A stretch of DNA of 64,000 bases from positions 124,001 to 188,000 of the IMG/VR virus record IMGVR_UViG_3300046808_001241; one strand, written 5' to 3'. This document shows positions 7,162-54,500 of this stretch, one piece after another. Each line of letters begins with the position of its first letter. Positions within the stretch are counted from its first letter, which is position 1. Made by a program: the position numbers and the translations under genes. The notes beneath the pieces were generated by a model that saw only the letters and a list, made by a program, of their open reading frames with translations, was not told the origin of the DNA and ran no database searches.

Positions 7162-7413
7162 CTAACTACTTAAGTTTTGACTCTGGAGAGACATCATATG
7201 TTCATCTTGAAACATACTTTTGTACGGTTCATCACAATCTTCTGAGATAATCCAACCGAGTTCATTCAGAGCTTCTTCCAATGCAAGTTCGTAAGAAAGA
7301 GAGTTCAGCACAATAGTTTTAGGTGACTCGTCTTTCGAAGTTATTGTAAAAATTTTTCTTGGCATAATTGTTTTAGCTTTTTTTTGATAAGCTCTATTAA
7401 TTGTTCGTCCCAA
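7162..7413 (-). CDS. Hypothetical protein
   Basis: ORF abuts the next gene; real start may be the internal MPRKIF. Confidence 0.45.
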   Translation of the reverse strand: MGRTINRAYQKKAKTIMPRKIFTITSKDESPKTIVLNSLSYELALEEALNELGWIISEDCDEPYKSMFQDEHMMSLQSQNLSS

Positions 7414-7450
7414 AATTTAAAAATTTCTCATGAAATATTTAAGCTAATTA

Positions 7451-7730
7451 ATGTGAGACAGAAAATGTAAATACTTTAATGACGGGATTGATTACGAAGT
7501 CAAATATAAAAAAGGCATTGAACTCGAAAAAAATTGAAAAGACGAACACGAAATCGCCAAAAACCTCAATCGAGTATCGAGATTGCTTTTGTACTTAAAT
7601 ACCAGACATGTTTGATGTTCTTGTATATTGTTTAGAAGAATACGAAAAACGCTTGGATTCTAGAGACTCAATGTGTGATCTCGTAGACGATAAAAATCAA
7701 AAAGATATTAATAATATATATATGCAATAA
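7451..7730 (+). pseudogene. Probable decayed gene
   Basis: One frame reads M*DRKCKYFNDGIDYEVKYKKGIELEKN*KDEHEIAKNLNRVSRLLLYL with TGA stops; a shifted frame continues PDMFDVLVYCLEEYEKRLDSRD to TAA at 7728-7730. Confidence 0.35.
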
Positions 7731-7768
7731 AACAGCTTTCTCAAAATATTATAAAACGTTTTGATGCT

Positions 7769-7957
7769 CTAGTGAAAATCCCTTAGGTAGCTTTTAGGTT
7801 CGTCTGCAGAACCTTCAGAATCTGCAACGTCGCTTGTGCTTTCATAATCATCCTCTGCATAATGTCCATAATGTTGTTTGTATAATTCAGGAAAAAGAGT
7901 ATAGATTTCAACTCTCATGCAATATTCAGCGTCATCTTCCCATTCAAACTGTTTCAT
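7769..7957 (-). CDS. Small acidic hypothetical protein
   Basis: 62-aa ORF following the glycan operon. Confidence 0.5.
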   Translation of the reverse strand: MKQFEWEDDAEYCMRVEIYTLFPELYKQHYGHYAEDDYESTSDVADSEGSADEPKSYLRDFH

Positions 7958-7969
7958 AAATTCTATTAT

Positions 7970-8801
7970 TCACACTATATCTTCAACCTTCAAATCCCTT
8001 CCTTTAAAGTTTCTGTAGTCTAAATTAGGAAACGTTTTTGTGAAAAAATTAAACTGTCTTGGGTCTACGCTATCGAACCCTGGATACTCTAAATTCGCAA
8101 TAGGATAAACAGACCTGTCTATGTCCAATATTTTGTATAACCTGTTTATCGTCTCTGTAAAATAACATTCATTCATATGATTATGAGAAACACATAATAA
8201 TTTGTTTTGAAATTCTTTTTCTATATAATCACACATATTAATCCGATTATCATATAAATCAGATTCTTCTTTATATCTTTGCCTGTTTTCGTTTCTATAT
8301 TTTTGATAATTTAGATTAAATGGATATTCATTTTTCAATATTGCAGCAAGAGCAGGATCCTCGGATTTTTGGAGATAGTTTATTATTTCTTCGGCATTAT
8401 TTGCTTTAGTTTTAACGTATTCTATGTACGGAGAAAATCGCCTTGCATCTGTTAAATGAGCAAAAAACCGAGTATCCGGAATACAAATTTTTAAACCGGT
8501 TGCTATTGTATCATGTAAGTAGGTTGTTTTGAGTTCATCTATTACTGATGTTCCAGAGTGATCTTGAAATACAAAAATCTCAGCCTCTCTAATTTTAGAA
8601 TGAATACAGTCCTTATAGATTTCTTGAGCTTCTCTGTTTTCAGGAGACCACACAGCAAAGACACCATGTTCGTTCCAAAAAGGTTTCAAACCACAGTCCT
8701 TGCAAAGTTGAACGTCAAATTTATCCGACAATTTTAATCTAAAATGTTTGGCGACAACTCCAATTTGGCAGTTGCCATAAAATAATATCTTTTTTTTTCA
8801 T
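7970..8801 (-). CDS. WcbI-like polysaccharide biosynthesis protein, frameshifted at an A9 tract after its ATG
   Basis: ATG at 8801-8799 then 9 A (8798-8790); with 8 A it reads MKKKILFYGNCQIGVVAKHF and joins ORF 7970..8731. GNCQ, FVFQ, I.IP...F and HNH resemble WcbI-family motifs. Confidence 0.65.
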
Positions 8802-8804
8802 TGG

Positions 8805-8990
8805 TTAATTATAATTTGCCAGCTTGCTGATTTGACTTTCCAAAAAAATTATATGCTGGATAAAATCATATTTTTCGCATATAATTGCTTCGAGTTCTTG
8901 TCTTAATTTTATATTTTGATTTTCAATAGACAAACTGTCTATTTCCTCAAATAGTAATTTATCGATTACTGGTGAATCTCCAAAGGTCAT
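8805..8990 (-). CDS. Small coiled-coil hypothetical protein
   Basis: 61-aa ORF overlapping the upstream stop by 4 nt. Confidence 0.5.
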   Translation of the reverse strand: MTFGDSPVIDKLLFEEIDSLSIENQNIKLRQELEAIICEKYDFIQHIIFLESQISKLANYN

Positions 8991-9727
8991 TTCGTATATT
9001 GTTTGATGATGTCACATCTTGCTACATCATCAAATTTTATATCGGTTTTGTTGCAAAATTCCTTGCAAGCGTAGTGGGAATAGTGAACAAGCGGTTTGTT
9101 CCAAAAATCATGTCTAGGAGGATCGGAAATAAAATTTCTATCTCTTGTCATTTTAATATCTTCGTCTTTGTCTATTATTTTGTCGTGATAATACAAACAG
9201 AAGAACTCTTGATCATGAAAATGTCTGAATTTTCGTTCTTTATACATTTCAATATATTTTTTTATGTTTTGTTCCGTAACACTAATAAATTTTTTGCACA
9301 AGGTTAAAAACTGCGATGGGGTTCCGCTAGCGAAACACGGACAACAATTATCCATTAGATGCAATGTGTTTTCTGGTTCGATTGGATTAAAATTGTGATT
9401 TATCACATCATAATCGCTTACATAAAATTTTTCCTCAATCTGAGTAGAATAAGCTAACCATCGAAGCCAGCAACTTAAACCATATTTTTTTAAAGGCATT
9501 CCTGCAATTTCTTGATGAAGTCTGGTTGTTTCTGCAACAAATTCTTTATAAAAATCTGCTTTCTCAGCATCCTTCCTTGTTAGTACAATTGGCTCAAACC
9601 CGTGATCTTTCCAAGAATTCTCCCAAAGAGCAACCAACTCATCTTGATTTTGGAAATTAATGTTTTCGTAATATGTATAGATTTTCATTTCAGTATGTGT
9701 ATTTAAACGTTTTAATGTCCCATTCAA
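8987..9727 (-). CDS. Putative GT-A fold glycosyltransferase (real start probably MKIY at 9688)
   Basis: W..SW..HG..P.VL, CWLRWLAY, DxD motif YVSDYDVIN, later HDQE. Confidence 0.6.
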   Translation of the reverse strand: MNGTLKRLNTHTEMKIYTYYENINFQNQDELVALWENSWKDHGFEPIVLTRKDAEKADFYKEFVAETTRLHQEIAGMPLKKYGLSCWLRWLAYSTQIEEKFYVSDYDVINHNFNPIEPENTLHLMDNCCPCFASGTPSQFLTLCKKFISVTEQNIKKYIEMYKERKFRHFHDQEFFCLYYHDKIIDKDEDIKMTRDRNFISDPPRHDFWNKPLVHYSHYACKEFCNKTDIKFDDVARCDIIKQYTK

Positions 9728-10325
9728 AAAGATTATAAATTAAATTTTTTGTTTCTTCGTCGTAAAAATCCTTGTAGTCTTTTCTAACTATATATTTCTC
9801 CGAATTGTTTAAGTGTGGAACATCTATCTCTGAAGTAAATTGTAGCTTGTCTTTAATCAAAGAAAATTCTTCTTTTAAGTTTTCTAACTTGATGACACAA
9901 TCCAAAGAAAACGTGTCTTCTAATACCATGTAGGGGTTGGTCGTTAGCTCAGAATTAAAATTTTTCTTAAAATATTTAAAAGCAAATTCTTTAAACGTCA
10001 TTTGTTTAGAATCTTTGACGTATTTGGGCATTTTAAATTGATCTGCTCTTTTAAGAAAATATTCATATTCTTTGTGCCTAGTATGATTGTAAAAAGAGAC
10101 GGCTCGATCCCAAGGATTACGTATTACAGAAAACTTAAAAAACTCGCCTGGATCAAGTCCAAACGTTTTGATCTTGTCTACATGCATTTTTAAAGATCCA
10201 TGTTTAAACTTATGAACTTGTGGATATTTTTCCCTCAATTTTAAAAACCCTAACATCTCTTCAATGGATGTACCTCCGCATTTAGGAGGGTGAGTAAAAA
10301 TAATCTTTTTGTTTAAGTCGTACAT
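9690..10325 (-). CDS. Sulfotransferase (Sulfotransfer_2/carbohydrate sulfotransferase-like)
   Basis: 5'-PSB motif IFTHPPKCGGTSIE and 3'-PB motif FSVIRNPWDRAVSFY. Confidence 0.85.
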   Translation of the reverse strand: MYDLNKKIIFTHPPKCGGTSIEEMLGFLKLREKYPQVHKFKHGSLKMHVDKIKTFGLDPGEFFKFSVIRNPWDRAVSFYNHTRHKEYEYFLKRADQFKMPKYVKDSKQMTFKEFAFKYFKKNFNSELTTNPYMVLEDTFSLDCVIKLENLKEEFSLIKDKLQFTSEIDVPHLNNSEKYIVRKDYKDFYDEETKNLIYNLFEWDIKTFKYTY

Positions 10326-11195
10326 TTATCTTATAAATGTTTTAAACAAAAGCTCGTCCCAATACGTTCTGTTTTTAAATGTTGTCTGTGCTTCTAATGA
10401 GAGTTGTTCGAAATTTATTTTCTTGTTTGATGTTTCGTTTTTTGTTAAAGTATCCCAAGCGCGTCTTTCAATTTGAGCAATATCAAAGCCGTAGCATACT
10501 AAAAACGTTTCTTGAAGTGCTTTGTCCGTTTCCTTAATATGAAACACGTGAAATTGTTTTAACATTTCCACTGTTTGTTGATATAAATCTTCGTTTATAG
10601 GAGTTGAATTGTTAGTGTTATTTAGATTACGAATCAACCAACTGTCTTCCAGTTCTTCTGATAACACATAATCCTCAAACGTGAGCGATTTAATCTTTCC
10701 GTGAGTTCGTTCATGAGCCGACAGATCAGACGTAATGTAGTTGTAAAATGACTGTGCTCTTAAAAACGGTTCTCTTAAAATTATAAACTGATGTAAATCA
10801 TAATTTTTTGCTAGCTTTGTTATTTCATCTCTACAACTAAAACCACGAGCTTCGATAATAATTCCAAACAAAAAAACATTTGCTAGCAGATTTTCGTTTA
10901 AATTATTAATATCAATATCCCATTCTGTATTAGAATGTTTTTTGTCAAAAACATTAAGAGTTTCACAAAAATAATTTGGATCCCCAATTAAAAATTTTGC
11001 AACTATAAATTCGTTGCTTTTAATCTGTAAACACTTGATAGAATCTTGATTAAGAGAGAAATTTTTTAGCCAATCTGTATAAATTCTTCTATAATACCTA
11101 AAGGACATTAACATCCAATCAGAAACATATGTTCCTGCATTTTTTGGTATATGATAAAAGACTGGTATTTTACGCTTTTGGATTGCAAGTTTCAT
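10326..11195 (-). CDS. Second sulfotransferase
   Basis: VFYHIPKNAGTYV and IILREPFLRAQSFYNY. Confidence 0.8.
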   Translation of the reverse strand: MKLAIQKRKIPVFYHIPKNAGTYVSDWMLMSFRYYRRIYTDWLKNFSLNQDSIKCLQIKSNEFIVAKFLIGDPNYFCETLNVFDKKHSNTEWDIDINNLNENLLANVFLFGIIIEARGFSCRDEITKLAKNYDLHQFIILREPFLRAQSFYNYITSDLSAHERTHGKIKSLTFEDYVLSEELEDSWLIRNLNNTNNSTPINEDLYQQTVEMLKQFHVFHIKETDKALQETFLVCYGFDIAQIERRAWDTLTKNETSNKKINFEQLSLEAQTTFKNRTYWDELLFKTFIR

Positions 11196-11982
11196 TTAAC
11201 CAGTAGTTGTATTCTGGGCACGTGACAATATCTGCTAAAGAAGTATCTTTACAACCGTGATGAACTACTGCCTCTGGATAGATCGGTTCATCATATGTTA
11301 CTACTCCATTCAAATCTCCATTATCCTCGCCTTTAATCATATAAGGATTTGTGTGAATTTTATAATTTAATGTTCTGAATCCTTGCTGAATAAGTTTTGT
11401 ATCAGCAGTATGCGGCATTATTTCCCATTGTGTAACGACATCAAAAGCAGTTGGGAGCTGATCAACATATTGCCAGATAGTGCAAATTTCATCGACTCTT
11501 GGAGGATATACGGCAGTTCCTTGCAAGTGTTCTGCAATATTAATTATATATTCATCTTTTGTTACAGTAGTTGTATTTTGAATAGTACCAAAACATGGTT
11601 TGCCACATTTGTGATATGCTTCTTCTAAAACATCTGCCCATTTTGGTTTTAATGCTATACAATCAAGCTCCATCCAAAACCATGGCTGCTTGTTATCGAT
11701 TTCTTTTAAATATTCGATTGTATATTTCCAATAACAATTTGGACCTTGTGGCCAGCCACTTGTCCCATCTCCTTGTTTAAACAAATGCAGATTTGCTTTA
11801 TTAGGAAATTGATCTTTGATTAGATCAAAAACAGAACGAGCAAAGTGCTTGTCAGAAGGACGAGACACGACAAGCAATTCGTGATTCGTATATAAACCGA
11901 AGTGTCTTAGGCTCTTTATGAAACCTAAGACACTTAAAGGTTTTTGAAATTCGTAAGATGAAACAGGAACAATTATAAGCAT
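11170..11982 (-). CDS. Putative glycosyltransferase-like protein
   Basis: GWPQGPN..W and WFWMELDC (DxD-like) motifs; heads the operon with AATAAATA at 11988-11995. Confidence 0.5.
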   Translation of the reverse strand: MLIIVPVSSYEFQKPLSVLGFIKSLRHFGLYTNHELLVVSRPSDKHFARSVFDLIKDQFPNKANLHLFKQGDGTSGWPQGPNCYWKYTIEYLKEIDNKQPWFWMELDCIALKPKWADVLEEAYHKCGKPCFGTIQNTTTVTKDEYIINIAEHLQGTAVYPPRVDEICTIWQYVDQLPTAFDVVTQWEIMPHTADTKLIQQGFRTLNYKIHTNPYMIKGEDNGDLNGVVTYDEPIYPEAVVHHGCKDTSLADIVTCPEYNYWLNETCNPKA

Positions 11983-12009
11983 GGGCTTATTTATTTTCCT
12001 TGTTTTAAA

Positions 12010-12711
12010 TTACAATTCGATTCCTGCTCCAGAATTATAAAGAGAAGAAACTTCTCCTAATGTAAGAGCCCTATTCCAGATACCAACTGCGTCAACCAAT
12101 CCTTTTCCATTTTGGCCGTCTCCTGCTCCTAAAACGAAGCTCGAGTCTTGAAATGCGTCCCCTGTGTTTTCCGTATGAAAGAGCTGTCCGTCTACATATA
12201 TTTTAACTTCCCCGATTGTGGAATCATGAGAAAGAACAGCATGCACCCAAACGTTCGAAGCTAAACTTCTCGAAGGTTCATTTCCTGTGGAAGGAAGATA
12301 AAAAGCCAAACGTCCGCCAGTATAACTATCAGCATAAACAGACGTTCCGAATGCTTTTACTACACACAAAGGAAACTCTTCAATTCCGTTTCTATTAATC
12401 CAGCAAGAATATGAGCCAGATGAGCCTGTTACAATAGAGGCAATTTGAGCTTCTAGTGTTTGATTTCCTTGTAGATTTGCTGCATTTCCGATCTTTCCAG
12501 AAGAGAAAGTTACTCCACCATTATTGGTAAGAGTATTTCCGTTTCCAGAAGAATCTGAAGTGTCGCTGAGTCTATAAAAAGCCTGAAGACCGCTCGATAA
12601 GCCGCCTCCTCCACCGCCTCCACCATAGCCATAGCTAGAGGAAACTACTCGCATTTTGCCAGTAGATGTAAATTTAACTTTTGCTGCAGATCGTATATTT
12701 AAAAGTGCCAT
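12010..12711 (-). CDS. LamG/ConA-like domain protein
   Basis: LQAFYRLSDTSDSSGNGNTLTN, WVHAVL, IYVDG, GLVDAVGIWNRALT.EV..LYN. Confidence 0.85.
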   Translation of the reverse strand: MALLNIRSAAKVKFTSTGKMRVVSSSYGYGGGGGGGGLSSGLQAFYRLSDTSDSSGNGNTLTNNGGVTFSSGKIGNAANLQGNQTLEAQIASIVTGSSGSYSCWINRNGIEEFPLCVVKAFGTSVYADSYTGGRLAFYLPSTGNEPSRSLASNVWVHAVLSHDSTIGEVKIYVDGQLFHTENTGDAFQDSSFVLGAGDGQNGKGLVDAVGIWNRALTLGEVSSLYNSGAGIEL

Positions 12712-12745: not shown

Positions 12746-12774
12746 CCCCATACTGGGTTTGGACCAGTATGGGG
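12746..12774 (-). terminator. Rho-independent terminator
   Basis: Perfect 11-bp stem CCCCATACTGG/CCAGTATGGGG with 7-nt loop, then TTTT on the minus strand, downstream of 12800..15451. Confidence 0.8.
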
Positions 12775-39955: not shown

Positions 39956-40153
39956 ATGTTCAAAAATATTTACTACAAAACCTTAGTTTGGACTTCTTAT
40001 CAAATTGGAGATATTTTGAGTAATTTTGAATATGAATGGAGTTATAACCTCTATCAAAAATGCATGAGCTTTTCTTTAGATTGCGATGAGCATATTGATT
40101 TTTGGTTTTGGAAAGAACCTCCTTTGAACGACGATGAGGATGACAATTTATGA
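39956..40153 (+). CDS. Hypothetical protein
   Basis: 65 aa; stop overlaps the nrdB start (ATGA). Confidence 0.55.
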   Translation: MFKNIYYKTLVWTSYQIGDILSNFEYEWSYNLYQKCMSFSLDCDEHIDFWFWKEPPLNDDEDDNL

Positions 40154-41142
40154 AAACACAAAACAGACCTAAAATATTTGAAGAACAGATAGCAAGAAAG
40201 CCAAATCATTTTTCTTGGACGGACTCGTTCGTCGAGAGTATTCAAAACGGATTTTGGACGCATCGGGAATTTAACTTCAAATCAGACATTCAGCAATTTA
40301 AAGTTAATTTGACCGATCAAGAAAGAGATATTATTATCCGCACGCTTTCTGCTATTGGACAAATTGAAATTGCTGTAAAAACATTCTGGGGAAAGCTCGG
40401 AGAGAATTTGAGATTTCCAAATTTTTCTGACCTAGGTTATACTATGGCCCACACAGAAGTCATTCACAATAATGCTTATGAGCGTCTTATTGACGTATTA
40501 GGCTTAAGTGAAGTGTTTGAAGAAAACTTAAAACTTGATTGGATTCAAGGACGGGTTAACTATCTTCGTAAATACACTCACAAGTTTTATAAAGATTCAA
40601 AGAAACAATATCTTTATGCTATTATCTTGTTCACGTTGTTTGTTGAGAACGTTTCGTTGTTTAGTCAGTTCTATATCATTAACTGGTTTGCAAGGTTCAA
40701 AAACGTTCTTAAAGATACAGACCAACAAGTCAAATACACACGCAATGAAGAAAACCTCCATGCTTTGATTGGCATTAAAATTATCAACACTATTAGAGAA
40801 GATTATCCAGAAATGTTCGATGAAGAGCTGGAACAAAAGATTCTTCACGAGGCAGAAGAGGCTTATAAGTCAGAAGCAAAGATTGTGGATTGGATGATTA
40901 ACGGCATTCAAGAAGAAGGATTGACTGCTCCAATCCTCAAAGAATTCATTAAGAACAGAATTAATGAATCGTTAACTCAAATTGGTTTTAAAACAGCATT
41001 TGAAGTTGATAAAGATCTTTTAAAGACTACAATGTGGTTTAATGAAGAATTGCTTGGAGAGAACGCGACAGATTTTTTTCATAGTCGGCCCACTTCATAT
41101 GCAAAGAACAATCAATCATTTTCTGAAGATGACTTGTTTTAA
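40150..41142 (+). CDS. nrdB: Ribonucleotide reductase beta subunit, class Id-like
   Basis: FW...E, QIEIAVKTFW, EVIH..AY, FVENVSLFSQF, EENLHA, DFF.SRP.SY. Confidence 0.95.
   Translation: MKTQNRPKIFEEQIARKPNHFSWTDSFVESIQNGFWTHREFNFKSDIQQFKVNLTDQERDIIIRTLSAIGQIEIAVKTFWGKLGENLRFPNFSDLGYTMAHTEVIHNNAYERLIDVLGLSEVFEENLKLDWIQGRVNYLRKYTHKFYKDSKKQYLYAIILFTLFVENVSLFSQFYIINWFARFKNVLKDTDQQVKYTRNEENLHALIGIKIINTIREDYPEMFDEELEQKILHEAEEAYKSEAKIVDWMINGIQEEGLTAPILKEFIKNRINESLTQIGFKTAFEVDKDLLKTTMWFNEELLGENATDFFHSRPTSYAKNNQSFSEDDLF
41107..41142 (+). repeat. 36-nt direct repeat, copy 1 (3' end of nrdB)
   Basis: aacaatcaatcattttctgaagatgacttgttttaa; copy 2 at 42865-42900 differs at 2 synonymous positions. Confidence 0.95.
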
Positions 41143-41196
41143 GTTATAAGCTGACTTTACTCGAAAAAGTACACGACTTAGATTAAGTAATCTTGT

Positions 41197-42900
41197 ATGT
41201 TTACACGCGTATTTGATACAAAGTCTTTTATCGATAAATCCAAACAGAAATTTAGTTCCAAATTTAGTTACGAGGATACGGTATATACAAAATCAACAAA
41301 TAGACTTAACGTAATTTGCAGCATTCACGGCAAAGTCGAAATTCTTCCAGGAGTGCACTTGTCTGGAGCGGGATGCCCGAGCTGTTCGAGGGCGTTAAAT
41401 GGCTTGAGTCATAGAATGGACACTGAAACGTTTATTAAAAGAGCTCAAGCTAAACATAATAATTTTTACAATTACGACAAAGCAACATTTCAAGGTAGTT
41501 TAAAAAACCTAATAGTCACTTGTCCTGTGCACGGAGATTTCGCAATTCAAGCAAGTCGACATATAAATAACGGAGCTGGTTGCTCAAAGTGTGGTTTTAT
41601 TCGTCGTGTAAAAAAATGCACTACCCCACTCGATGTGTTTTTAGAAAAGACATCCAAAAAACCAAATTTCGAAAATTATGATTTCAGTTTAGTTAACTTT
41701 AAAAATAAAAAAGAATGGGTTACCGTTATTTGTAAAAAGCACGGAGAGTATAAAACTAAACCTAGATATATTGATAATAGTGCGTTTTTCGGTTGTAGTC
41801 AGTGCAAATGCGAAAGCAGAACTTTCACTACTGATACTTTTATCGAAAAAGCTAAACAAATACATGCCGAAAGATATCTTTATGATAGAGTCGAATATAA
41901 AGATTCACACACAGAGGTGACACTAATCTGTAAAACTCACGGAGATTATATTTGCAAACCTTATGTACACTTGGCGGGAGGAGGCTTTTGTCCAAGCTGC
42001 ACTAACAATGGTGTAAGTTCTTATGAGAGAGAAATAAAATTATTTTTGCAACAAAACGGCATCAGCATAGAATCTTCTTTTAGAGGATTTGACGGATTGA
42101 AGGAAATAGATTTAATTTGTCACAACAAAAAAATAGGAATTGAAGTTAATGGGTTATATTGGCACTGTGACTTATACAAAGAAAAAAACTTTCATAAACA
42201 CAAAACGGAAACTTTGTTAAAGCAGGGATATCGACTAATTCATATATTTGAAGACAGCTGGCTTCTCAAAAAAGACGTTTGTTTGTCAATTTTATTGAAT
42301 GCGTTTAATAAAACTCCCAATAAAATTTACGCAAGAAAGTGTGAACTAAAACTAATTTCAGATAAAGAGTCAAAACATTTTTTAAATGCAAACCACGTAC
42401 AAGGTTCTTGCGTTTCTAAAATAAGATATGGTTTATTCTATAATAACGAGCTTGTATCGGTTATGACCTTCGGCTCTAACAGAAAAAATTTGGGCAATAA
42501 ATCAAAACCAAATGAATACGAACTACTAAGGTTTTGTAACAAAACCTACACCAATGTCGTTGGAGGAGCTTCTAAACTGTTTGCTTCTTTCATCAAACAA
42601 CACAACCCTCGGAAAATAACAAGCTATTGCAATAGAAGTATCGGAACGGGAAATCTATACAAGCAGCTTGGATTTCAGTTTTTATACAATACGCCTCCAA
42701 ACTATTTTTATGTCAGAGGAAGTACAAGATTGCCGAGATTTAAATTTCGAAAAGATGTGTTAATTAAACAAGGACATGATAAAAACAAAACAGAAGCTTG
42801 CATTATGAAGGAATTAGGGTATAATAGAATTTATGACTGTGGAAGCATGAAATTTGAATGGACAAATAATCAATCATTTTCCGAAGATGACTTGTTTTAA
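41197..42900 (+). mobile_element. Free-standing homing endonuclease (C-x2-HG...C-x2-C zinc repeats, PD-(D/E)XK/Vsr-like core, Hef-like C-terminal domain)
   Basis: Four C..HG repeats with GCxxC; EIDL...KIGIEVNGLYWH; ARKC...FLN.NH.QG...YELLRFC...GGASKL...LY..LGF. Confidence 0.8.
42865..42900 (+). repeat. 36-nt direct repeat, copy 2 (end of endonuclease ORF)
   Basis: aataatcaatcattttccgaagatgacttgttttaa, encoding the same NNQSFSEDDLF*. Confidence 0.95.
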
Positions 42901-42903
42901 AGT

Positions 42904-43671
42904 ATGAGTAAAAGTCATTCTTGGCTTTCAGACCAACTTAAAGGTTTTCCTAACTTTGCAAAAATGTTTCGAGATGTTCTTGCAGAGGAATTGCAGCAAA
43001 CCTATTTGGAAGAAGGTTTGATTGCGTCTTGGGATATTGAAAAATTAATCAAAAGAATATCAAACATTATTGGAGACAAAATTTTAGAAGTACAAAAAAC
43101 TACTCTTCCAGACTTTTTAAAAAATACCAACTACGGAGAAGTCTTTACTGTTAATATATTTTTAAAAGAAAAACTAACAAAAGAAGAAACAAATCAAGTA
43201 GACCAACTTTTGGATTTGTTTGGGTATACTAATGCTTTGTGGATTGAACCAGACGGACTTCAGTTGCAGCTAGAACCAAGGTATCCAGTCAAACTTAACG
43301 AACTTATAAAACAAACTTCTGACAACTATCTTTTCCATATAACTCAAAAGAAATCGCTAGACAAGATTAAAGAAATAGGATTAGCTCCAAGACCTTCAGA
43401 AACTAAATTTGAACATCCGGGAAATAGAATTTATTTGTTGTGGCTGCCAGCAGTACAAAATAAAGGGTTGATTGTGAACGCTCTTGTTAAACAGTTAGCA
43501 AACAACAAAAAGCTGGAAGAAAAAGATTTTGCTGTTATGATGCTAAAATATAACCCTAAATACGACTACTACCTAGATGATACTACAACATTGCTCGATC
43601 AAAAAATTATAGCAATGTTCACCACAAATAATATCAACCCAAAAGAAATTGTTAAAATTATAAATTTATGA
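42904..43671 (+). CDS. Tpt1/KptA-like NAD-dependent ADP-ribosyltransferase-fold protein (paralog 1)
   Basis: FHITQKKSLDKIKEIGLAP...HPGNRIYLL...YYLD...TTNNINPKEI; N-terminal LEE|GLI. Confidence 0.65.
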   Translation: MSKSHSWLSDQLKGFPNFAKMFRDVLAEELQQTYLEEGLIASWDIEKLIKRISNIIGDKILEVQKTTLPDFLKNTNYGEVFTVNIFLKEKLTKEETNQVDQLLDLFGYTNALWIEPDGLQLQLEPRYPVKLNELIKQTSDNYLFHITQKKSLDKIKEIGLAPRPSETKFEHPGNRIYLLWLPAVQNKGLIVNALVKQLANNKKLEEKDFAVMMLKYNPKYDYYLDDTTTLLDQKIIAMFTTNNINPKEIVKIINL

Positions 43672-43913
43672 AACGAATATACAAACATTATCCGAATATA
43701 TTCAATTTCAAAATTGGTAAAAAACTAAATATCGGACTTTGGAAGTATCAATCTAGTATAGTTTTTAGATGGATAAATCTCCATCCAAAAATTTGGAAGT
43801 TTTGGAGATTAAATTACTTAAAGGGTAAGTTTGTATACTTTGAGTGCACAATATATAAAAAAATAGAAATTTGGTGGGACGGATTTTTATTTCAAATAGT
43901 GCTAGATAAATGA
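43668..43913 (+). CDS. Aromatic/basic hypothetical protein
   Basis: 81-aa ORF coupled to the upstream stop. Confidence 0.45.
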   Translation: MKRIYKHYPNIFNFKIGKKLNIGLWKYQSSIVFRWINLHPKIWKFWRLNYLKGKFVYFECTIYKKIEIWWDGFLFQIVLDK

Positions 43914-43936
43914 GAAATTTTTTATAAGATTAACAT

Positions 43937-45586
43937 ATGACTGAAAAATACTATTGGCTTAACAATGACTCGCGAAAATTTCTTGAGCGTGGATATCTTC
44001 TTGAAGAAGAAACTCCGGAACAACGAATTCGAGACATTGCAGAAGCTGCTGAAAAATATCTTGGTATAAAAGGGTTTGCTGATAAATTCGAAGAATACGT
44101 TGCAAAAGGTTTCTACAGCTTAAGCTCGCCTGTATGGTCCAACTTTGGAAGAAAACGTGGTCTTCCTATAAGTTGTTTTGGATCTTACATATCCGATACA
44201 ATGGAATCGATTTTGCATAAAGTTTCAGAAGTAGGTATTATGACAAAACACGGAGGAGGAACTTCTGCATACTTTGGAGCAATTCGAGGAAGAGGAACTA
44301 CAATCTCTTGTGGAGGAGAATCTACAGGATCTGTACATTTTATGGAGCTTTACAACAAGCTAATGAATGTCGTTTCGCAAGGTAATGTTCGTAGAGGCTC
44401 ATTTGCTGCATATCTTCCCATCGATCACAAAGATATTGAAGAGTTTCTTGAGATTCGTTCAGAAGGACATGACATCCAAGAAATGTCGTTTGGTGTATGT
44501 GTTTCTGATCAATGGATGAAAGACATGGTTGATGGAGACAAAGACAAACGCAAGATTTGGTCCAAAGTCATTAAAAAGCGGTTCGAATCTGGTTATCCTT
44601 ATATCTTTTTTTCTGATACAGCCAATAATAACGCTCCACAAGTTTATAAAGACAAAGGACTAAAGATTCACAATTCCAATCTTTGCACGGAGATTTTTTT
44701 ATCCAACTCAGAAGAGGAATCTTTTGTTTGTGATCTATCGTCACTTAATCTCGAAAAGTGGGATGAAATCAAAAATACAGATGCTGTTCAAACATTAGTG
44801 TACTTCCTCGACGCTGTGATGTCAGAGTTTATTGACAAAACAGAAGGCATGCAATTCATGGAAGCTCCAAGAAAGTTTGCGATTAACCAAAGAGCTCTTG
44901 GTGTAGGTGTTCTTGGATGGCATTCGCTGCTCCAAACTAAGATGATTGCTTTTGAGTCATTTGATGCGAAGATACTTAATGTGGATGTTTGGAAGACAAT
45001 ACGGGAACGAGCTGACAAAGCCACAGAAGAACTTGCTGGTCTTTTTGGAGAACCAGAATTGCTTAAGGGCTATGGAAGAAGGAATACAACAACTCTTGCC
45101 ATTGCACCCACAACCAGCTCAGCGTTTATCTTGGGCCAAGTATCCCAGTCAATTGAGCCCTATAATTCAAACTATTATGTTCGCGACTTGGCTAAAGGTA
45201 AGTTTTCATACAAAAATCCATACCTTAAATCACTGCTAAAACAAAAGGACAAAGATAATGATGAAACATGGTCTTCGATTCTTGCTCATGGTGGTTCTGT
45301 TCAGCATCTTGATTTCTTATCAGATAATGAAAAAGACGTATTCAAAACTTTTGGAGAGCTTTCCCAAAAAGAAATCGTCATCCAAGCGGCGCAAAGGCAA
45401 AAATACATTGATCAAGGTCAATCCTTAAACGTAATGATTCCTCATGATGCTAAACCAAAAGACGTTAATGAGCTTTTGATATTTGGTTGGGAACAGGGAA
45501 TCAAGAGTTTCTACTACCAAAAATCTACCTCGCCCTCACAAAAGCTAGCTAGATCGATTCTTACCTGCAAATCTTGTGAAGGGTAA
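43937..45586 (+). CDS. nrdA: Ribonucleotide reductase alpha subunit (no ATP cone)
   Basis: SSPVWSNFG...LPISCF, KHGGGTS, QG.VRRGS.A.YL, SNLCTEI, VCDLSSLNL, AIAPTTSS, C-terminal CKSCEG. Confidence 0.97.
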   Translation: MTEKYYWLNNDSRKFLERGYLLEEETPEQRIRDIAEAAEKYLGIKGFADKFEEYVAKGFYSLSSPVWSNFGRKRGLPISCFGSYISDTMESILHKVSEVGIMTKHGGGTSAYFGAIRGRGTTISCGGESTGSVHFMELYNKLMNVVSQGNVRRGSFAAYLPIDHKDIEEFLEIRSEGHDIQEMSFGVCVSDQWMKDMVDGDKDKRKIWSKVIKKRFESGYPYIFFSDTANNNAPQVYKDKGLKIHNSNLCTEIFLSNSEEESFVCDLSSLNLEKWDEIKNTDAVQTLVYFLDAVMSEFIDKTEGMQFMEAPRKFAINQRALGVGVLGWHSLLQTKMIAFESFDAKILNVDVWKTIRERADKATEELAGLFGEPELLKGYGRRNTTTLAIAPTTSSAFILGQVSQSIEPYNSNYYVRDLAKGKFSYKNPYLKSLLKQKDKDNDETWSSILAHGGSVQHLDFLSDNEKDVFKTFGELSQKEIVIQAAQRQKYIDQGQSLNVMIPHDAKPKDVNELLIFGWEQGIKSFYYQKSTSPSQKLARSILTCKSCEG

Positions 45587-48280: not shown

Positions 48281-50095
48281 TTAACGACTAACTTCTTCCC
48301 AATCCATAGAAGCAAGCATTCCCGAACCATTAACAGTATCCGTAGAAGCAACTAAAGTAATTTCATATGGAGTCTTTGTTAAATTGTTTCGTTCTAATTG
48401 GAATTTGAATAAAGCCTCTTTAAGAATATCTAAGTTTGGAGAGCCTTGGTTAGAAGCATTCAAGAAGCCACTTGCAAGGATTCTTCCTCCTGCATAGCTT
48501 GTTCCGGTTATATTATACTCAACAGCGCTGTCATCCCCAGCATCAACCCAACTTCCTCCGCTTGTAGCACCGCTAGCTTTTATTTGCCAATTATAGTTAA
48601 TGCCATTTCCTGTTCCAAGAATTGACAGAGCGGTAAGAATAACAATGGCATCTAACCTATCAGGAGTTGTTTTTAACTTAATTGAAATAATTGGATAATA
48701 CGTATTTGTTGCTGCAAATGTTCTTGGTGTAGTAATTGGAATGCTGACTGCTTGTTGCAGACCTCTTAGTTCGTAACCGCCTTCAGAAATTACTGTGGAG
48801 CAGACTTGTTTTAGAGTGCGAGAACCAGACGTTGCACCTTTATTAGTAATTTCATATCTTAAAGGTAAGGAAGCAGTTGTAATGTATGTAGAAGCAATTA
48901 AATTTGCGTGATGGAATGAATGACAGACAACGAATTGACCATTAATAACAAGGCCACATCTTACCGTTCCGACCCCAAGCCATTCAATATCCATCCAAAA
49001 GATTTGAGCTTTTGTAATGTCAAGCGTGAGACCAGAAGGGCCGTTTCCGTCAAGTTTGTCCCCATTCCATGCAGAAAGAGGAACAATTGTTTCAGAGGAA
49101 GGAGAGCCATTAACAAGACTTCTTTCAACAAAGCTAATTGTTCCATCATCCAGCTGAATATAAATTCCATTATCTTGGCCAAAGTAACCAACTCTTTGTC
49201 GAAGATTGGTTGCAGAAGGAGCCATGATAAACGTGTTCATGACTTGTAAAGATTTCCCAGCTTGATAGCTAAAGACTTTTGTTGTTTCCCGGATGACAGA
49301 AGAACCAGACAAGTTACTGACTGTCATGTCAATCAATCCTTGATTTTGGTTGAATGAGGTAGAACCCCCGACTGCAGTTAAAGAAGACCAAAGATTGTTG
49401 TCTCGATACCTGTGAGAAGAATCAAACAAGGTTAGAGGACTGGATGTTCTTAGACGACCAAATGCATCAAAGGTTGGAGAGTGCGCAAAAGTAACAGGAA
49501 ACCCAACAGAAGGATCAACGGTTGCAGTAATTGGATTTGTTACATTAACATTTAAAGATGACGTTGCAGAAACAACAGTTACATTATTATTGTTGAGATC
49601 TTTTAAAGCAATTGAGTTAAGAACATTAACTCCAGTCGTTGGATTAGTAACGGTAATAGAACCAGAGACTCCAACAGTATTAGAAATATTAACAGCAGTT
49701 ACTGGAGCAACTTCAAAGACTCTTAGAGCACTCAGAGTTTTATTGACTGCTGCAAAGTTCCCAGCTTTGTCCCCAATTGTTATGTCATCAACAGAAGATT
49801 CTAAGTCCTGAGTAAGAACCTTGAGAGCATTTCCTTCTGAACCTCCTAATTGAACGATGGTAGCTCGAATTGTATGATTGACTCCATCTGTTAGTTCTAC
49901 TGCTCCAATGTTAATATCCGAAGCACTTAAAGAGATTGAAAGATCGCTTAAGTTTGTAATATAACCAGCACGAGCAAATAAAGGTCTATTGGCATCGTTT
50001 TCAACAGGAACCCAAGAAAATGTTTCGGCCATTCCAACATTATATGAAGGAGGTTGACCAGGAGTGCCAGTAAGTTTTGGAGTAAGAGTAGCCAT
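48281..50095 (-). CDS. Virion structural protein
   Basis: N-terminus shared with 2826..3443; DAFGRLR.S.P.TLFDS, RET..VF.YQ.GKS, WLGVG.VR.G domain seen in phage structural proteins; GATAAGTA at 50103-50110. Confidence 0.65.
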   Translation of the reverse strand: MATLTPKLTGTPGQPPSYNVGMAETFSWVPVENDANRPLFARAGYITNLSDLSISLSASDINIGAVELTDGVNHTIRATIVQLGGSEGNALKVLTQDLESSVDDITIGDKAGNFAAVNKTLSALRVFEVAPVTAVNISNTVGVSGSITVTNPTTGVNVLNSIALKDLNNNNVTVVSATSSLNVNVTNPITATVDPSVGFPVTFAHSPTFDAFGRLRTSSPLTLFDSSHRYRDNNLWSSLTAVGGSTSFNQNQGLIDMTVSNLSGSSVIRETTKVFSYQAGKSLQVMNTFIMAPSATNLRQRVGYFGQDNGIYIQLDDGTISFVERSLVNGSPSSETIVPLSAWNGDKLDGNGPSGLTLDITKAQIFWMDIEWLGVGTVRCGLVINGQFVVCHSFHHANLIASTYITTASLPLRYEITNKGATSGSRTLKQVCSTVISEGGYELRGLQQAVSIPITTPRTFAATNTYYPIISIKLKTTPDRLDAIVILTALSILGTGNGINYNWQIKASGATSGGSWVDAGDDSAVEYNITGTSYAGGRILASGFLNASNQGSPNLDILKEALFKFQLERNNLTKTPYEITLVASTDTVNGSGMLASMDWEEVSR

Positions 50096-51711: not shown

Positions 51712-51719
51712 GTTAGTAT

Positions 51720-53099: not shown

Positions 53100-53103
53100 A
53101 ATG

Positions 53104-54492: not shown

Positions 54493-54500
54493 GTGTATAT

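What the first reader, a model, noticed from the sequence alone, without database searches (positions are those of the whole stretch)
7970..11995. Late-promoter-driven glycosyltransferase and double-sulfotransferase operon among the fibre genes
The order is GT-like, sulfotransferase, sulfotransferase, GT-A, small protein, WcbI-like, all overlapping or abutting and headed by AATAAATA at 11988-11995. Both sulfotransferases keep PAPS-binding motifs (HxPKxxGT and R(N/E)P..R..S.Y). Late timing and position suggest the phage builds a sulfated glycan on its own S/T-rich fibres or capsid, or remodels the host surface. No PAPS-synthesis gene is in this window, so host PAPS would be used unless one is encoded elsewhere.
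Basis: partly seen in the sequence, partly recalled or inferred. Interest (0 to 1): 0.6.

Follow-up and report, generated by a model that had tools for sequence, protein, structure and literature searches.

The report
Phage glycosyltransferase–sulfotransferase gene cassette
An uncultured 217-kb freshwater T4-like phage carries, among its tail-fibre genes, a tight six-gene cassette of two glycosyltransferases, two sulfotransferases and a WcbI-like putative acetyltransferase that probably builds a sulfated sugar chain from host-supplied precursors; no cultured phage in the collection searched has these genes, and what the cassette decorates is still unknown.

Summary
Six overlapping or abutting minus-strand genes lie at 7970-11982, and AATAAATA sits 5 nt before the first ATG.

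Gene identities:
- A (270 aa) and D (233 aa) have no Pfam hit, but both fold with high confidence into GT-A glycosyltransferases. A is nearest GT31-type enzymes (Z 13.2). D is nearest GT24/GT8-type enzymes and the PBCV-1 capsid glycosyltransferase A64R (Z about 11).
- C is a Pfam Sulfotransfer_2 member.
- B has no direct hit. Its family keeps the PAPS-binding motifs invariant, and some relatives hit Sulfotransfer_2.
- F is WcbI-like, but an A9 run puts its ATG out of frame in this genome.

A, B and D are functionally linked: single polypeptides A-B, B-D, D-B, A-B-B and B-B recur among B's relatives.

The late-promoter reading is supported. 41 of 74 ATAAATA sites in the genome lie within 16 nt upstream of a start codon, and the genome has a gp55 homologue.

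The whole genome lacks PAPS-synthesis genes, so host PAPS is needed.

The target is unresolved. The fibre-module position and late motif are conserved only in the close lineage. More distant relatives carry the cassette next to ribonucleotide reductase genes behind sigma70-like promoters.

A virion protein is my preferred target, held at modest confidence.

The parts
11988..11995 (-). AATAAATA, a T4/cyanophage-type late-promoter motif (NATAAATA), 5 nt upstream of gene A's ATG
   Evidence: Sequence read. Across the genome, 41 of 74 ATAAATA sites lie 0-16 nt upstream of starts, against 1-8% for control 7-mers of the same composition. NATAAATA is described as the cyanomyovirus late promoter in PMC2984593. 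A gp55 homologue is in the genome.
11170..11982 (-). Gene A: GT-A fold glycosyltransferase, nearest to GT31-type structures; invariant E105-x-D107 and H242
   Evidence: No Pfam, NCBIfam or PHROG hit. 57 homologues, all metagenomic and unnamed. AF2 model pLDDT 93.9. All 50 best VIA-align PDB matches are GT-A glycosyltransferases; the best are B3GalT6 Z 13.2 (rmsd 4.1, 211 aligned), CHSY3-CHPF 13.1, B3GalT5 12.8, C1GalT1 12.4 and Manic Fringe 12.3. Foldseek agrees.
10326..11195 (-). Gene B: divergent PAPS-type sulfotransferase (family-2-like), almost exclusively viral
   Evidence: Motifs HIPKNAGT (5'-PSB) and LREPFLRAQSFYNY (3'-PB) are present. The family keeps H15, P17, G21, R141, S149, Y153 and H161 invariant. 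B itself has no Pfam hit. 5 of 50 relatives hit Sulfotransfer_2 (best E 7e-5) and 2 of 50 hit phrog_3347. In the Atlas feature search, 24 of 30 named hits are Sulfotransfer_2 clusters, score 0.95. hhalign against C is local only (E 4e-5).
9690..10325 (-). Gene C: sulfotransferase, Pfam Sulfotransfer_2 member
   Evidence: PF03567 E 6.6e-14, 53.1 bits against a cut-off of 22, covering profile positions 8-251 of 252. phrog_3347 'galactose-3-O-sulfotransferase' E 1.6e-13. It is the only PF03567 hit in the genome.
8987..9688 (-). Gene D: GT-A fold glycosyltransferase nearest to retaining-type families (GT24/GT8/GT34-like); invariant D92-Y-D94, H158-D159-Q160 and H202
   Evidence: No Pfam hit for D or for 38 relatives. 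More than 388 homologues, all unnamed. AF2 model pLDDT 95.6. VIA-align: UGGT catalytic domain Z 11.4 (rmsd 3.5, 193 aligned), glycogenin 11.0, PBCV-1 A64R capsid glycosyltransferase 10.9, mimivirus R699 10.6, LgtC 10.3. Foldseek finds GT6 enzymes at E 1e-4. BFVD matches are viral GT34, GT8 and DXD glycosyltransferases.
8805..8990 (-). Gene E: 61-aa protein of unknown role
   Evidence: No family hit. Among the related loci, a homologue was found only in L004, beside the D homologue.
7970..8801 (-). Gene F: WcbI-like protein (putative CoA-dependent O-acetyltransferase family), with its ATG out of frame in this genome
   Evidence: Homologues at 41-52% identity hit Pfam WcbI PF18588 above the cut-off. 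The family profile's only PDB hit is WcbI 4bqn, E 0.0097, collinear at the GxCQ, FxFQ and NH motifs. WcbI binds CoA and is a putative acetyltransferase (PMC4104973). Frame analysis.
8790..8798 (-). A9 homopolymer directly after F's ATG; it puts the ATG one base out of frame with the conserved ORF
   Evidence: The probable source-sample contig (depth about 30) keeps A9. A diverged strain in an independent riverine metagenome has one base fewer here, which is in frame.
7769..7957 (-). Small acidic 62-aa gene following F, probably the end of the transcription unit
   Evidence: ORF. It is syntenic with the cassette in L060 (42% identity). A 350-nt AT-rich gap without ORFs follows.
12746..12774 (-). 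Intrinsic-terminator hairpin (11-bp stem, then TTTT) after the 883-aa tail-fibre gene. It separates that gene from the LamG gene and the cassette.
   Evidence: The same hairpin is conserved in L060.
12010..12711 (-). Upstream neighbour: a Laminin_G_3 (concanavalin-like lectin fold) protein with a poly-Gly tract, preceded by ATTAAATA. It is a context gene and a possible carbohydrate binder.
   Evidence: PF13385 E 6e-16. Sequence. Truncated to a 25-codon remnant in L060.

Best explanation
This is a soluble, cytoplasmic glycan-building and glycan-tailoring cassette.

Proposed mechanism:
- Two GT-A glycosyltransferases add sugars from host nucleotide-sugars. A is GT31-like and D is GT8/GT24-like.
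- Two PAPS-dependent carbohydrate sulfotransferases (B and C) then sulfate the sugars using host PAPS.
- A WcbI-like enzyme (F) would O-acetylate the product where the gene is intact.

In this phage the cassette is transcribed late, from a gp55-type promoter directly before gene A, inside the tail-fibre module. The most likely acceptor is therefore a phage structural protein made at the same time (fibre, or another virion surface protein), which would give virions a sulfated, negatively charged glycan coat.

Shown here: the gene order, the folds of A and D, the family of C, the motifs and family links of B, the WcbI link of F, the A/B/D fusions, the promoter motif statistics, and the absence of PAPS genes.

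Inferred: enzymatic activity, donor sugars, the sulfated product, late timing, and above all the acceptor.

My odds: enzyme classes correct about 0.85; product is a sulfated glycan about 0.65; acceptor is a virion protein about 0.35-0.4. The confidence given for this explanation (0.4) is for the whole statement including the virion acceptor.
For: - Enzyme classes: C is Sulfotransfer_2. A and D are GT-A folds with invariant ExD and DxD motifs. B keeps the PAPS motifs invariant, with weak Sulfotransfer_2 and phrog_3347 hits in relatives and Atlas support. F is WcbI-like.
- Functional coupling: A-B adjacency recurs in at least 13 viral loci, and fused ORFs occur. Among 150 B-family representatives there are 5 A-B, 2 A-B-B, 5 B-D, 2 D-B and 10 B-B single polypeptides. 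One relative fuses B to a Pfam Sulfotransfer_1 domain.
- Cytoplasmic action: none of the six proteins has a membrane-spanning segment, and the cassette's six genes include no flippase, polymerase or priming phosphoglycosyltransferase.
- Late expression: motif position statistics; the gp55 homologue lies next to a gp47-like gene, as in T4; the motif is conserved before the A homologues in L002, L005 and L060.
- Fibre context is conserved in the close lineage: L002, L007 and L060.
- D's near structural neighbours include protein-directed glycosyltransferases, among them the chlorovirus capsid glycosyltransferase A64R.
- Precedent for phage-encoded virion glycosylation exists in mycobacteriophages (Freeman 2023, as cited in PMC12619734).
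- No PAPS-synthesis genes in the complete genome.
- Contigs from an RNA library are 100% identical to parts of A and D.
Against: - No acceptor is identified. Neighbouring structural proteins have ordinary Ser/Thr content and no S/T-rich tails.
- In more distant relatives the cassette sits beside nrdB/nrdA or among small non-structural genes, and some have sigma70-like rather than late motifs. Only 3 of 39 distinct upstream regions in the viral-contig loci have ATAAATA. Late timing and fibre linkage are therefore not properties of the family.
- B's fold was not predicted, and B fails Pfam on its own.
- A and D match no CAZy-type family model, so donor and linkage are guesses.
- F is frameshifted here.
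- The motif lies only 5 nt from the ATG, which implies nearly leaderless mRNAs. That is untested, and the motif could have another role.
- The RNA-library contigs could come from contaminating DNA, and they give no strand or timing.
Confidence: 0.4

Rival explanations
1. Host-envelope remodelling. The same enzymes act at the cytoplasmic face on host lipid-linked LPS, capsule or S-layer-glycan precursors. Infected cells and their debris then display an altered, sulfated or acetylated receptor, giving superinfection exclusion or protecting progeny from adsorbing to debris. This would be analogous to the seroconverting glycosyltransferases and O-acetyltransferases of temperate phages.
For: - The cassette behaves as a mobile, variable module. 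Its content ranges from A alone to A-F, it occupies different genomic sites, and some relatives have sigma70-like (early) promoters next to nrd genes.
- WcbI and family-2 sulfotransferases come from polysaccharide biosynthesis.
- The genome also carries a GDP-mannose-4,6-dehydratase-like gene and a GT2 elsewhere.
Against: - In this genome the promoter is of the late type, which leaves little time to change a cell surface before lysis.
- There is no membrane anchor, flippase or ligase in the cassette.
- The B family is nearly absent from 185,579 prokaryote genomes. Only 3 loci were found, all MAG contigs; L060 is syntenic with this phage's fibre module and so looks phage-derived, while L061 and L062 were not examined further. 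The module is therefore not borrowed recently from host glycan clusters.
- The phage is T4-like and shows no sign of lysogeny in what was examined.
Confidence: 0.27
2. DNA hypermodification. The glycosyltransferases decorate modified bases in phage DNA, as in T4 and other phages with glycosylated hydroxymethyl-pyrimidines, and the sulfotransferases further modify the DNA-linked sugars to evade restriction.
For: - Virus-encoded glycosyltransferases that hypermodify DNA with diverse glycans are known (Pyle 2024, cited in PMC12619734).
- In several relatives the cassette lies directly upstream of ribonucleotide reductase genes behind early-type promoters.
Against: - The complete genome has no ThyA-family enzyme (the family of dCMP/dUMP hydroxymethylases) and no ThyX.
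- The promoter here is of the late type and the context is the fibre module.
- From my own knowledge, no sulfated DNA modification is known.
Confidence: 0.06
3. Metabolic or small-molecule role. The sulfotransferases act as auxiliary metabolic genes on small metabolites or lipids (for example sulfolipid-like compounds), and the neighbouring GT-like genes are functionally independent.
For: - Phage sulfotransferases are commonly listed as auxiliary metabolic genes with unknown function (PMC10580990).
- phrog_3347 is filed under 'moron, auxiliary metabolic gene'.
Against: - Recurrent single-polypeptide fusions of B with the A-type and D-type glycosyltransferase domains argue for one pathway on a glycan.
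- The operon is tightly overlapping.
Confidence: 0.1

Closest known systems
Mycobacteriophage virion glycosylation (phage-encoded glycosyltransferases that glycosylate capsid and tail-tube proteins; Freeman et al. 2023, as cited in PMC12619734)
   Same: Phage-encoded glycosyltransferases located with structural genes. The proposed acceptor is a virion protein, and the glycan would change the particle surface.
   Different: - No sequence relationship was found.
- No sulfotransferases are involved there.
- The acceptors there are C-terminal glycosylated tails, and no comparable S/T-rich tail was seen here.
- The host and phage lineage are unrelated, and the function here is untested.
Chlorovirus PBCV-1 A64R and giant-virus glycosyltransferases (virus-encoded capsid glycosylation machinery)
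   Same: D's model aligns with A64R (2p6w, Z 10.9, 176 residues) and mimivirus R699 (Z 10.6). A's model aligns with A64R at Z 11.0. All are soluble GT-A enzymes with a DxD motif, encoded by a virus.
   Different: - Sequence identity is only 9-14%.
- Z scores are no higher than to many cellular GT-A enzymes, so this shows a shared fold, not demonstrated kinship.
- Those are eukaryotic viruses.
Carbohydrate sulfotransferases of Pfam Sulfotransfer_2 (PF03567; the eukaryotic CHST/HNK-1 type and bacterial relatives)
   Same: C matches the family model end to end. B and C keep the 5'-PSB (PKxxGT) and 3'-PB (RxP..R..S.Y) PAPS-binding motifs.
   Different: - B is too divergent to reach the Pfam threshold.
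- Both proteins are short and soluble, without the membrane anchor of the Golgi enzymes.
- B's family is almost entirely viral.
WcbI of the Burkholderia pseudomallei capsule cluster (PDB 4bqn; PMC4104973)
   Same: F's family matches the WcbI Pfam model through its relatives, and matches the 4bqn sequence collinearly. Both lie in polysaccharide-type gene clusters.
   Different: - The match is weak (E 0.0097 to 4bqn, and F itself is below the Pfam threshold).
- WcbI's own activity is only putative and needs an unknown partner.
- F's start is frameshifted here.
T4 / cyanomyovirus late promoters (TATAAATA / NATAAATA, read by gp55-gp33-gp45)
   Same: The octamer is identical to the cyanophage consensus. 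It is concentrated genome-wide just upstream of starts, many of them structural genes in the window, and a gp55 homologue is present.
   Different: The modal distance to the ATG is only 5 nt, which implies very short or absent leaders. No transcription start sites are mapped, and gp33 and gp45 were not searched for.

Membership tests
PAPS-dependent sulfotransferase (Pfam Sulfotransfer_2, PF03567) - gene C | Match to the family HMM above the curated cut-off over most of its length | tested here: met
   53.1 bits against a cut-off of 22, profile positions 8-251 of 252.
PAPS-dependent sulfotransferase (Pfam Sulfotransfer_2, PF03567) - gene C | 5'-phosphosulfate-binding loop (PKxxGT) and 3'-phosphate-binding motif (R...S) | tested here: met
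   HPPKCGGT at residues 12-19 and IRNPWDRAVSFYNH at 68-81.
PAPS-dependent sulfotransferase - gene B | Match to a sulfotransferase family HMM above the cut-off | tested here: not met
   B has no Pfam, NCBIfam or PHROG hit even at E 10. Only 5 of 50 relatives hit PF03567 at E up to 0.01 (best 7.3e-5), and 2 of 50 hit phrog_3347 at E up to 0.001.
PAPS-dependent sulfotransferase - gene B | Conserved 5'-PSB and 3'-PB motifs across the family | tested here: met
   H15, P17, G21, R141, S149 and Y153 are invariant; position 18 is K or R; T22 is kept in 48 of 50 and R146 in 47 of 50. BLASTP and hhalign align both motifs with C.
PAPS-dependent sulfotransferase - gene B | Sulfotransferase (P-loop-like alpha/beta) fold | not tested
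PAPS-dependent sulfotransferase - genes B and C | PAPS-dependent sulfate transfer | not testable with these tools
   Needs an enzyme assay.
GT-A fold glycosyltransferase - gene A | GT-A (single Rossmann-like, nucleotide-diphospho-sugar transferase) fold | tested here: met
   pLDDT 93.9. All 50 best PDB matches are GT-A glycosyltransferases, Z 9.5-13.2.
GT-A fold glycosyltransferase - gene A | DxD-type metal/nucleotide-sugar motif | tested here: inconclusive
   E105-L-D107 and H242 are invariant. This is an ExD variant; its placement at the canonical site in the model was not checked residue by residue.
CAZy family GT31 - gene A | Sequence membership in the family (family HMM) | tested here: not met
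   No Pfam glycosyltransferase family hit at E 10 and no PDB sequence-profile hit. GT31 enzymes are only the nearest folds, at 8-11% identity.
GT-A fold glycosyltransferase - gene D | GT-A fold | tested here: met
   pLDDT 95.6. Best matches are UGGT, glycogenin, A64R and LgtC at Z 10.3-11.4 over 176-194 residues.
GT-A fold glycosyltransferase - gene D | DxD motif | tested here: met
   D92-Y-D94 is invariant in 38 sequences and follows a beta-strand (88-91) as in GT-A enzymes. H202 is also invariant.
CAZy GT8/GT24/GT32/GT34 - gene D | Sequence membership in one family | tested here: not met
   No Pfam hit for D or for 38 relatives. The Atlas lead to Gb3_synth (GT32) is weak: score 0.92, 140 shared features.
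WcbI family (PF18588) - gene F | Match to the family HMM | tested here: inconclusive
   F itself has no hit. Four homologues at 41-52% identity score 29.6-39.8 bits against a cut-off of 29.2. The family profile finds only WcbI 4bqn in the PDB, E 0.0097.
WcbI family (PF18588) - gene F | Intact reading frame including the conserved N-terminal GxCQ motif | tested here: not met
   The ATG at 8801 is one base out of frame with the ORF that encodes KKKILFYGNCQ. The A9 run is kept in the high-depth source-sample contig.
T4-type late promoter | TATAAATA-like octamer upstream of late genes, enriched by position | tested here: met
   AATAAATA lies 5 nt before A. 41 of 74 ATAAATA sites lie 0-16 nt upstream of starts, against 1-8% for controls.
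T4-type late promoter | Late sigma factor gp55 encoded by the phage | tested here: met
   T4 gp55 matches G000 45038-45280 (E 6e-5, 34% identity, ORF of about 180 aa). The next gene is a gp47-like metallophosphoesterase, as in T4.
T4-type late promoter | Transcription start at the motif, late in infection | not testable with these tools
   Only contigs of an RNA library were available, with no strand, start or timing information.

The most novel reading that the evidence does not exclude
A large, almost purely viral family of coupled (often fused) glycosyltransferase-sulfotransferase modules lets aquatic tailed phages coat their own virion proteins with sulfated glycans. As far as I know and as far as the searches here show, that would be the first sulfated glycoconjugate made by a bacteriophage. 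Cassette content (A alone up to A-F) would vary between strains like an O-antigen locus, tuning particle charge, adsorption or grazing and enzyme resistance.
Probability: 0.3. Interest if true: 0.8.

Novelty: new variant of a known kind. Interest (0 to 1): 0.55.

Why it matters
Phage-encoded glycosyltransferases are known for DNA modification, serotype conversion and, recently, virion glycosylation. Sulfotransferases in phage genomes are noted only as genes of unclear function (PMC10580990).

Here the two activities are tied together by operon structure and by repeated gene fusions, in families with hundreds of members in aquatic viromes. None of the A, B or D genes appears in the 50,697 sequenced phage records searched.

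If the product is a sulfated glycan on virions or on the infected cell, it adds a new chemical layer to phage-host recognition. It would also be a new sink for host PAPS during infection.

The A and D families additionally give two well-modelled GT-A clades that no family model covers at present.

Tried and rejected
Searches that found nothing useful:
- Direct Pfam (E up to 10), NCBIfam and PHROG scans of A, B, D, E and F gave nothing.
- Sequence-profile searches of the PDB with the A, D and B family alignments gave nothing meaningful.
- A Pfam scan of 38 D relatives gave only noise.
- megablast of the region against 50,697 phage records found no match. tblastn of A, B and D also found none. 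C matched only two uncultured megaphages at 28-30% identity.
- The search for related loci with the single B sequence in viral contigs found no confirmed relative. The A alignment worked.
- hhalign of B's family against C aligned only the 3'-PB motif, so B and C are not close paralogues.

Ideas considered and rejected or weakened:
- Cyanophage identity. One virion protein is 65-68% identical to cyanophage proteins, but the genome lacks psbA, gp6 is only 22-23% identical to cyanophage gp6, and the runs that hold the sequence are freshwater. I treat it as a distant T4-like freshwater phage of unknown host.
- DNA-glycosylation reading. Weakened by the absence of ThyA-family and ThyX genes.
- 'S/T-rich fibre' argument. 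Composition is unremarkable.
- Sigma70 promoter and terminator scan. Counts are at shuffle level, apart from the hairpin at 12746-12774.

Not used: complex prediction, because I do not claim that any two proteins bind.

No alternative genetic code was used. F was read only by reference to the window, with no letter changed.

Full report
**Setting.** The window is bases 124001-188000 of a 217,182-bp virus record with direct terminal repeats, judged complete. It is a distant T4-like myovirus:
- It has a gp6-type baseplate wedge protein, only 22-23% identical to cyanophage gp6.
- It has a head-closure protein, ribonucleotide reductase and a gp55 homologue.
- It lacks psbA.
- The public runs that hold the stretch are freshwater, lake or river metagenomes.
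- GC content is 36.7% for the genome and 31-33% over the cassette.

**Observation.** On the minus strand, six ORFs fill 7970-11982 with overlaps or gaps of 0-3 nt:
- A 11170-11982
- B 10326-11195
- C 9690-10325
- D 8987-9688
- E 8805-8990
- F 7970-8801

AATAAATA lies at 11995-11988, 5 nt before A's ATG.

One correction concerns F. The ORF listing start (TTG at 8731) drops a conserved N-terminus. Homologues begin MKKKILFYGNCQ. In the window this peptide is encoded immediately after a stop codon, and the only ATG (8801-8799) is one base out of frame, separated by an A9 run.

**What the genes are.** Only C is recognised directly: Pfam Sulfotransfer_2 at 6.6e-14, full length, and phrog_3347.

*Gene A.* A has 57 close-to-moderate homologues, all unnamed metagenomic proteins without Pfam domains.
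- Its alignment has invariant E105-x-D107 and H242.
- The AlphaFold model is confident (pLDDT 93.9).
- An exhaustive structural comparison returns only GT-A glycosyltransferases in the top 50. GT31-type enzymes lead: B3GalT6 Z 13.2, CHSY3-CHPF 13.1, B3GalT5 12.8, C1GalT1 12.4, Manic Fringe 12.3. Foldseek agrees.
- The nearest ESM Atlas models are viral 'hypothetical' clusters at TM 0.8. One of these clusters carries a GH130 domain.

*Gene D.* D has more than 388 unnamed homologues.
- D92-Y-D94, H158-D159-Q160 and H202 are invariant.
- The model has pLDDT 95.6.
- Its best structural matches are retaining-type GT-A enzymes: UGGT catalytic domain Z 11.4, glycogenin 11.0, the PBCV-1 capsid glycosyltransferase A64R 10.9, mimivirus R699 10.6 and LgtC 10.3.
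- Neither A nor D reaches any family HMM. They are GT-A glycosyltransferases by fold and motif, not members of a named CAZy family.

*Gene B.* B has 273 relatives at the 50%-cluster level.
- In 50 of them H15, P17, G21, R141, S149, Y153 and H161 are invariant, and position 18 is K or R. This is the pattern of the 5'-PSB and 3'-PB PAPS-binding elements.
- Five relatives reach Sulfotransfer_2 weakly and two reach phrog_3347.
- Protein-language features place B among Sulfotransfer_2 clusters.
- B's fold was not predicted, so B is a sulfotransferase by motif and family bridge, with confidence of about 0.8.

*Gene F.* F's relatives at 41-52% identity pass the Pfam WcbI threshold. The family profile's sole PDB hit is WcbI itself (4bqn, E 0.0097), matching collinearly at three motifs. 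WcbI binds CoA and is a putative acetyltransferase that needs a partner (PMC4104973).

*Gene E* is a 61-aa protein of unknown role.

None of the six proteins has a convincing membrane segment.

**Are the genes one system?** Yes, by three lines of evidence.
1. The ORFs overlap or abut, and no convincing terminator was seen between A and the end of the 62-aa gene at 7769.
2. Among 53 IMG/VR loci that carry an A homologue, B follows A directly in at least 13. D, C and F join in variable combinations, and single ORFs hit two or three of the family HMMs: A+D in L021 and L024, D+B in L019 and L054, A+B+D in L022, A+B in L023.
3. Among the 150 best B-family representatives, the domain architectures are B alone in 120, B-B in 10, A-B in 5, B-D in 5, D-B in 2, A-B-B in 2, and several that combine B with a C-type domain. 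Another fuses B to a Pfam Sulfotransfer_1 domain.

These fusions are strong comparative evidence that the A-type glycosyltransferase, the B-type sulfotransferase and the D-type glycosyltransferase work on one substrate. They also show that doubling of sulfotransferase domains is a recurrent design.

**Promoter.** ATAAATA occurs 74 times in the genome, and 41 of these lie 0-16 nt upstream of a called ATG, most often at 5 nt. Of the twenty other 7-mers of the same composition, eighteen show 1-8%; the two exceptions (47% and 15%) overlap the motif itself.
- In the window the motif precedes A and a series of structural-module genes.
- NATAAATA is the published late promoter of T4-like cyanophages (PMC2984593).
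- T4 gp55 finds a homologue at genome position 45038-45280, followed by a gp47-like metallophosphoesterase as in T4.
- A strong terminator hairpin (12746-12774) follows the 883-aa fibre gene. The LamG gene after it has a variant ATTAAATA.

The cassette is therefore most simply a late unit with its own promoter. The caveat is that a motif 5 nt from the ATG implies almost leaderless mRNAs, and no transcription start is mapped.

**PAPS.** The complete genome has no APS kinase, no ATP sulfurylase and no PAPS-reductase/CysD-family gene. The control genomes do score for these families. Host PAPS is required. The genome does carry a GDP-mannose-4,6-dehydratase-like gene near 202.5-203.6 kb and a weak GT2 near 48 kb.

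**Context in relatives.**
- In the close lineage the cassette keeps its place in the fibre module:
  - L060 has fibre, the same terminator hairpin, a truncated LamG remnant, TATAAATA, then A-B-D, an unrelated gene, the 62-aa gene, the 7162-type gene and more fibre genes. L060 is a contig binned into a freshwater 'Bacteroidetes' MAG.
  - L002 has A after the fibre gene, with TATAAATA before it.
  - L007 has A alone between the fibre genes.
- In more distant relatives, A-B(-C-D) lies just upstream of nrdB/nrdA behind a TTGACT...TATAAT sequence (L012-L015, L018) or among small non-structural genes (L003-L005).
- Only 3 of 39 distinct upstream regions in the viral contigs set carry ATAAATA.

Late timing and fibre linkage are thus features of this lineage, not of the family.

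**Distribution.** No record among 50,697 sequenced phages carries A, B or D. The B family is almost absent from 185,579 prokaryote species genomes: three loci, all in MAG contigs, of which L060 is syntenic with this phage and so looks phage-derived.

**Reads.** Logan contigs of the probable source sample reproduce the region with the A9 run at depth of about 30. A diverged strain in an independent riverine metagenome has one base fewer in the run, which restores F's frame. Contigs of a freshwater metatranscriptome are 100% identical to parts of D (9142-9332) and A (11294-11474, 11602-11921). The frameshift is probably real in this strain or population. The RNA evidence is weak: contigs carry no strand information and DNA carry-over is possible.

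**Mechanism.** I conclude that the cassette is a cytoplasmic glycan-building and tailoring module. Two GT-A enzymes add sugars, two PAPS-dependent sulfotransferases sulfate them, and where F is intact a WcbI-like enzyme acetylates the product.

The acceptor is not identified. I prefer a virion protein (about 0.35-0.4) for three reasons:
- the late promoter and fibre-module position in this lineage;
- the lack of any membrane or export component;
- the precedent of phage-encoded and giant-virus-encoded virion glycosylation.

Remodelling of host envelope precursors is the main rival (about 0.27). It is favoured by the cassette's mobility and by the early-type promoters in other lineages. DNA modification is unlikely here because no hydroxymethylase-family gene exists. 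An unrelated metabolic role for the sulfotransferases is unlikely given the fusions.

**Novelty.** Viral glycosyltransferases and stray phage sulfotransferases are known. A conserved, often fused glycosyltransferase-sulfotransferase module in tailed phages was not found in the literature searched or among sequenced isolates. I rate it a new variant of a known kind, with interest 0.55.

Noticed in passing
window 8790-8801 (minus strand): The ATG of the WcbI-like gene F is followed by an A9 run that puts it one base out of frame with the conserved ORF. A diverged strain in an independent riverine metagenome has one A fewer, which is in frame. The probable source-sample contig keeps A9 at depth of about 30. 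Possible explanations are a fixed frameshift, a mixed population, or a slippage-prone start.
   Followed up: partly
whole genome G000; window sites listed: ATAAATA lies most often exactly 5 nt upstream of ATG starts (41 of 74 sites within 16 nt). If it is the gp55-type late promoter, many late mRNAs of this phage would be nearly leaderless. The extended consensus looks like ATAAATAA.
   Followed up: partly
window 12746-12774; L060 526-554: A strong terminator hairpin (CCCCATACTGG-loop-CCAGTATGGGG, then TTTT) after the 883-aa tail-fibre gene is conserved letter for letter in a relative whose A protein is 68% identical.
   Followed up: partly
window 12010-12711; L060 588-665: A Laminin_G_3 / concanavalin-like lectin-fold gene with a Gly9 tract sits between the fibre gene and the cassette. 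In L060 only a 25-codon remnant of it remains. It could be a carbohydrate-binding virion protein or a variable fibre accessory.
   Followed up: no
L060 (contig CANHGW010000057.1, 'Bacteroidetes bacterium' MAG): A 14-kb contig binned into a freshwater Bacteroidetes MAG is syntenic with this phage's fibre module and cassette. It is either a mis-binned phage contig or a lead to the host phylum.
   Followed up: partly
G000 about 202.5-203.6 kb (L055 1429-2481) and about 48 kb (L056 1342-2088): Outside the window the genome encodes a GDP-mannose-4,6-dehydratase-like NDP-sugar dehydratase (E 6e-77) and a weak GT2 glycosyltransferase. The phage therefore has further glycan genes that might feed or complement the cassette.
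   Followed up: partly
window 50335-56489 (minus strand): Three adjacent genes of near-equal length (458, 459 and 462 aa), two of which share motifs, plus a 662-aa gene. Each is preceded by NATAAATA. They look like a tandem family of late structural proteins; only weak PHROG hits of unknown function were found.
   Followed up: no
window 40150-45586 (plus strand): A 567-aa HNH/homing-endonuclease-like gene (phrog_559, E 3.5e-111) and a 255-aa ORF lie between the gene at 40150-41142 and the ribonucleotide reductase large-subunit gene at 43937-45586. In relatives (L012-L018) the two flanking genes are adjacent.
   Followed up: no
window 7414-7768: An AT-rich stretch of about 350 nt without an ORF of 50 aa or more on either strand follows the cassette. 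The next gene (7162-7413, TTG start) is syntenic with the cassette in L003, L004 and L060.
   Followed up: no
whole genome G000: No psbA, no ThyA and no ThyX in a complete 217-kb T4-like genome from fresh water, while one virion protein (48281-50095) is 65-68% identical to proteins of cyanophages and Puniceispirillum phage HMO-2011. The host is unknown.
   Followed up: partly
ESM Atlas cluster, row 4: A viral cluster of 548-aa proteins joins an A-like GT-A domain (TM 0.76 to A) to a GH130 (beta-1,4-mannooligosaccharide phosphorylase) domain in 46% of its members. This hints that the A family may act on mannosides.
   Followed up: no
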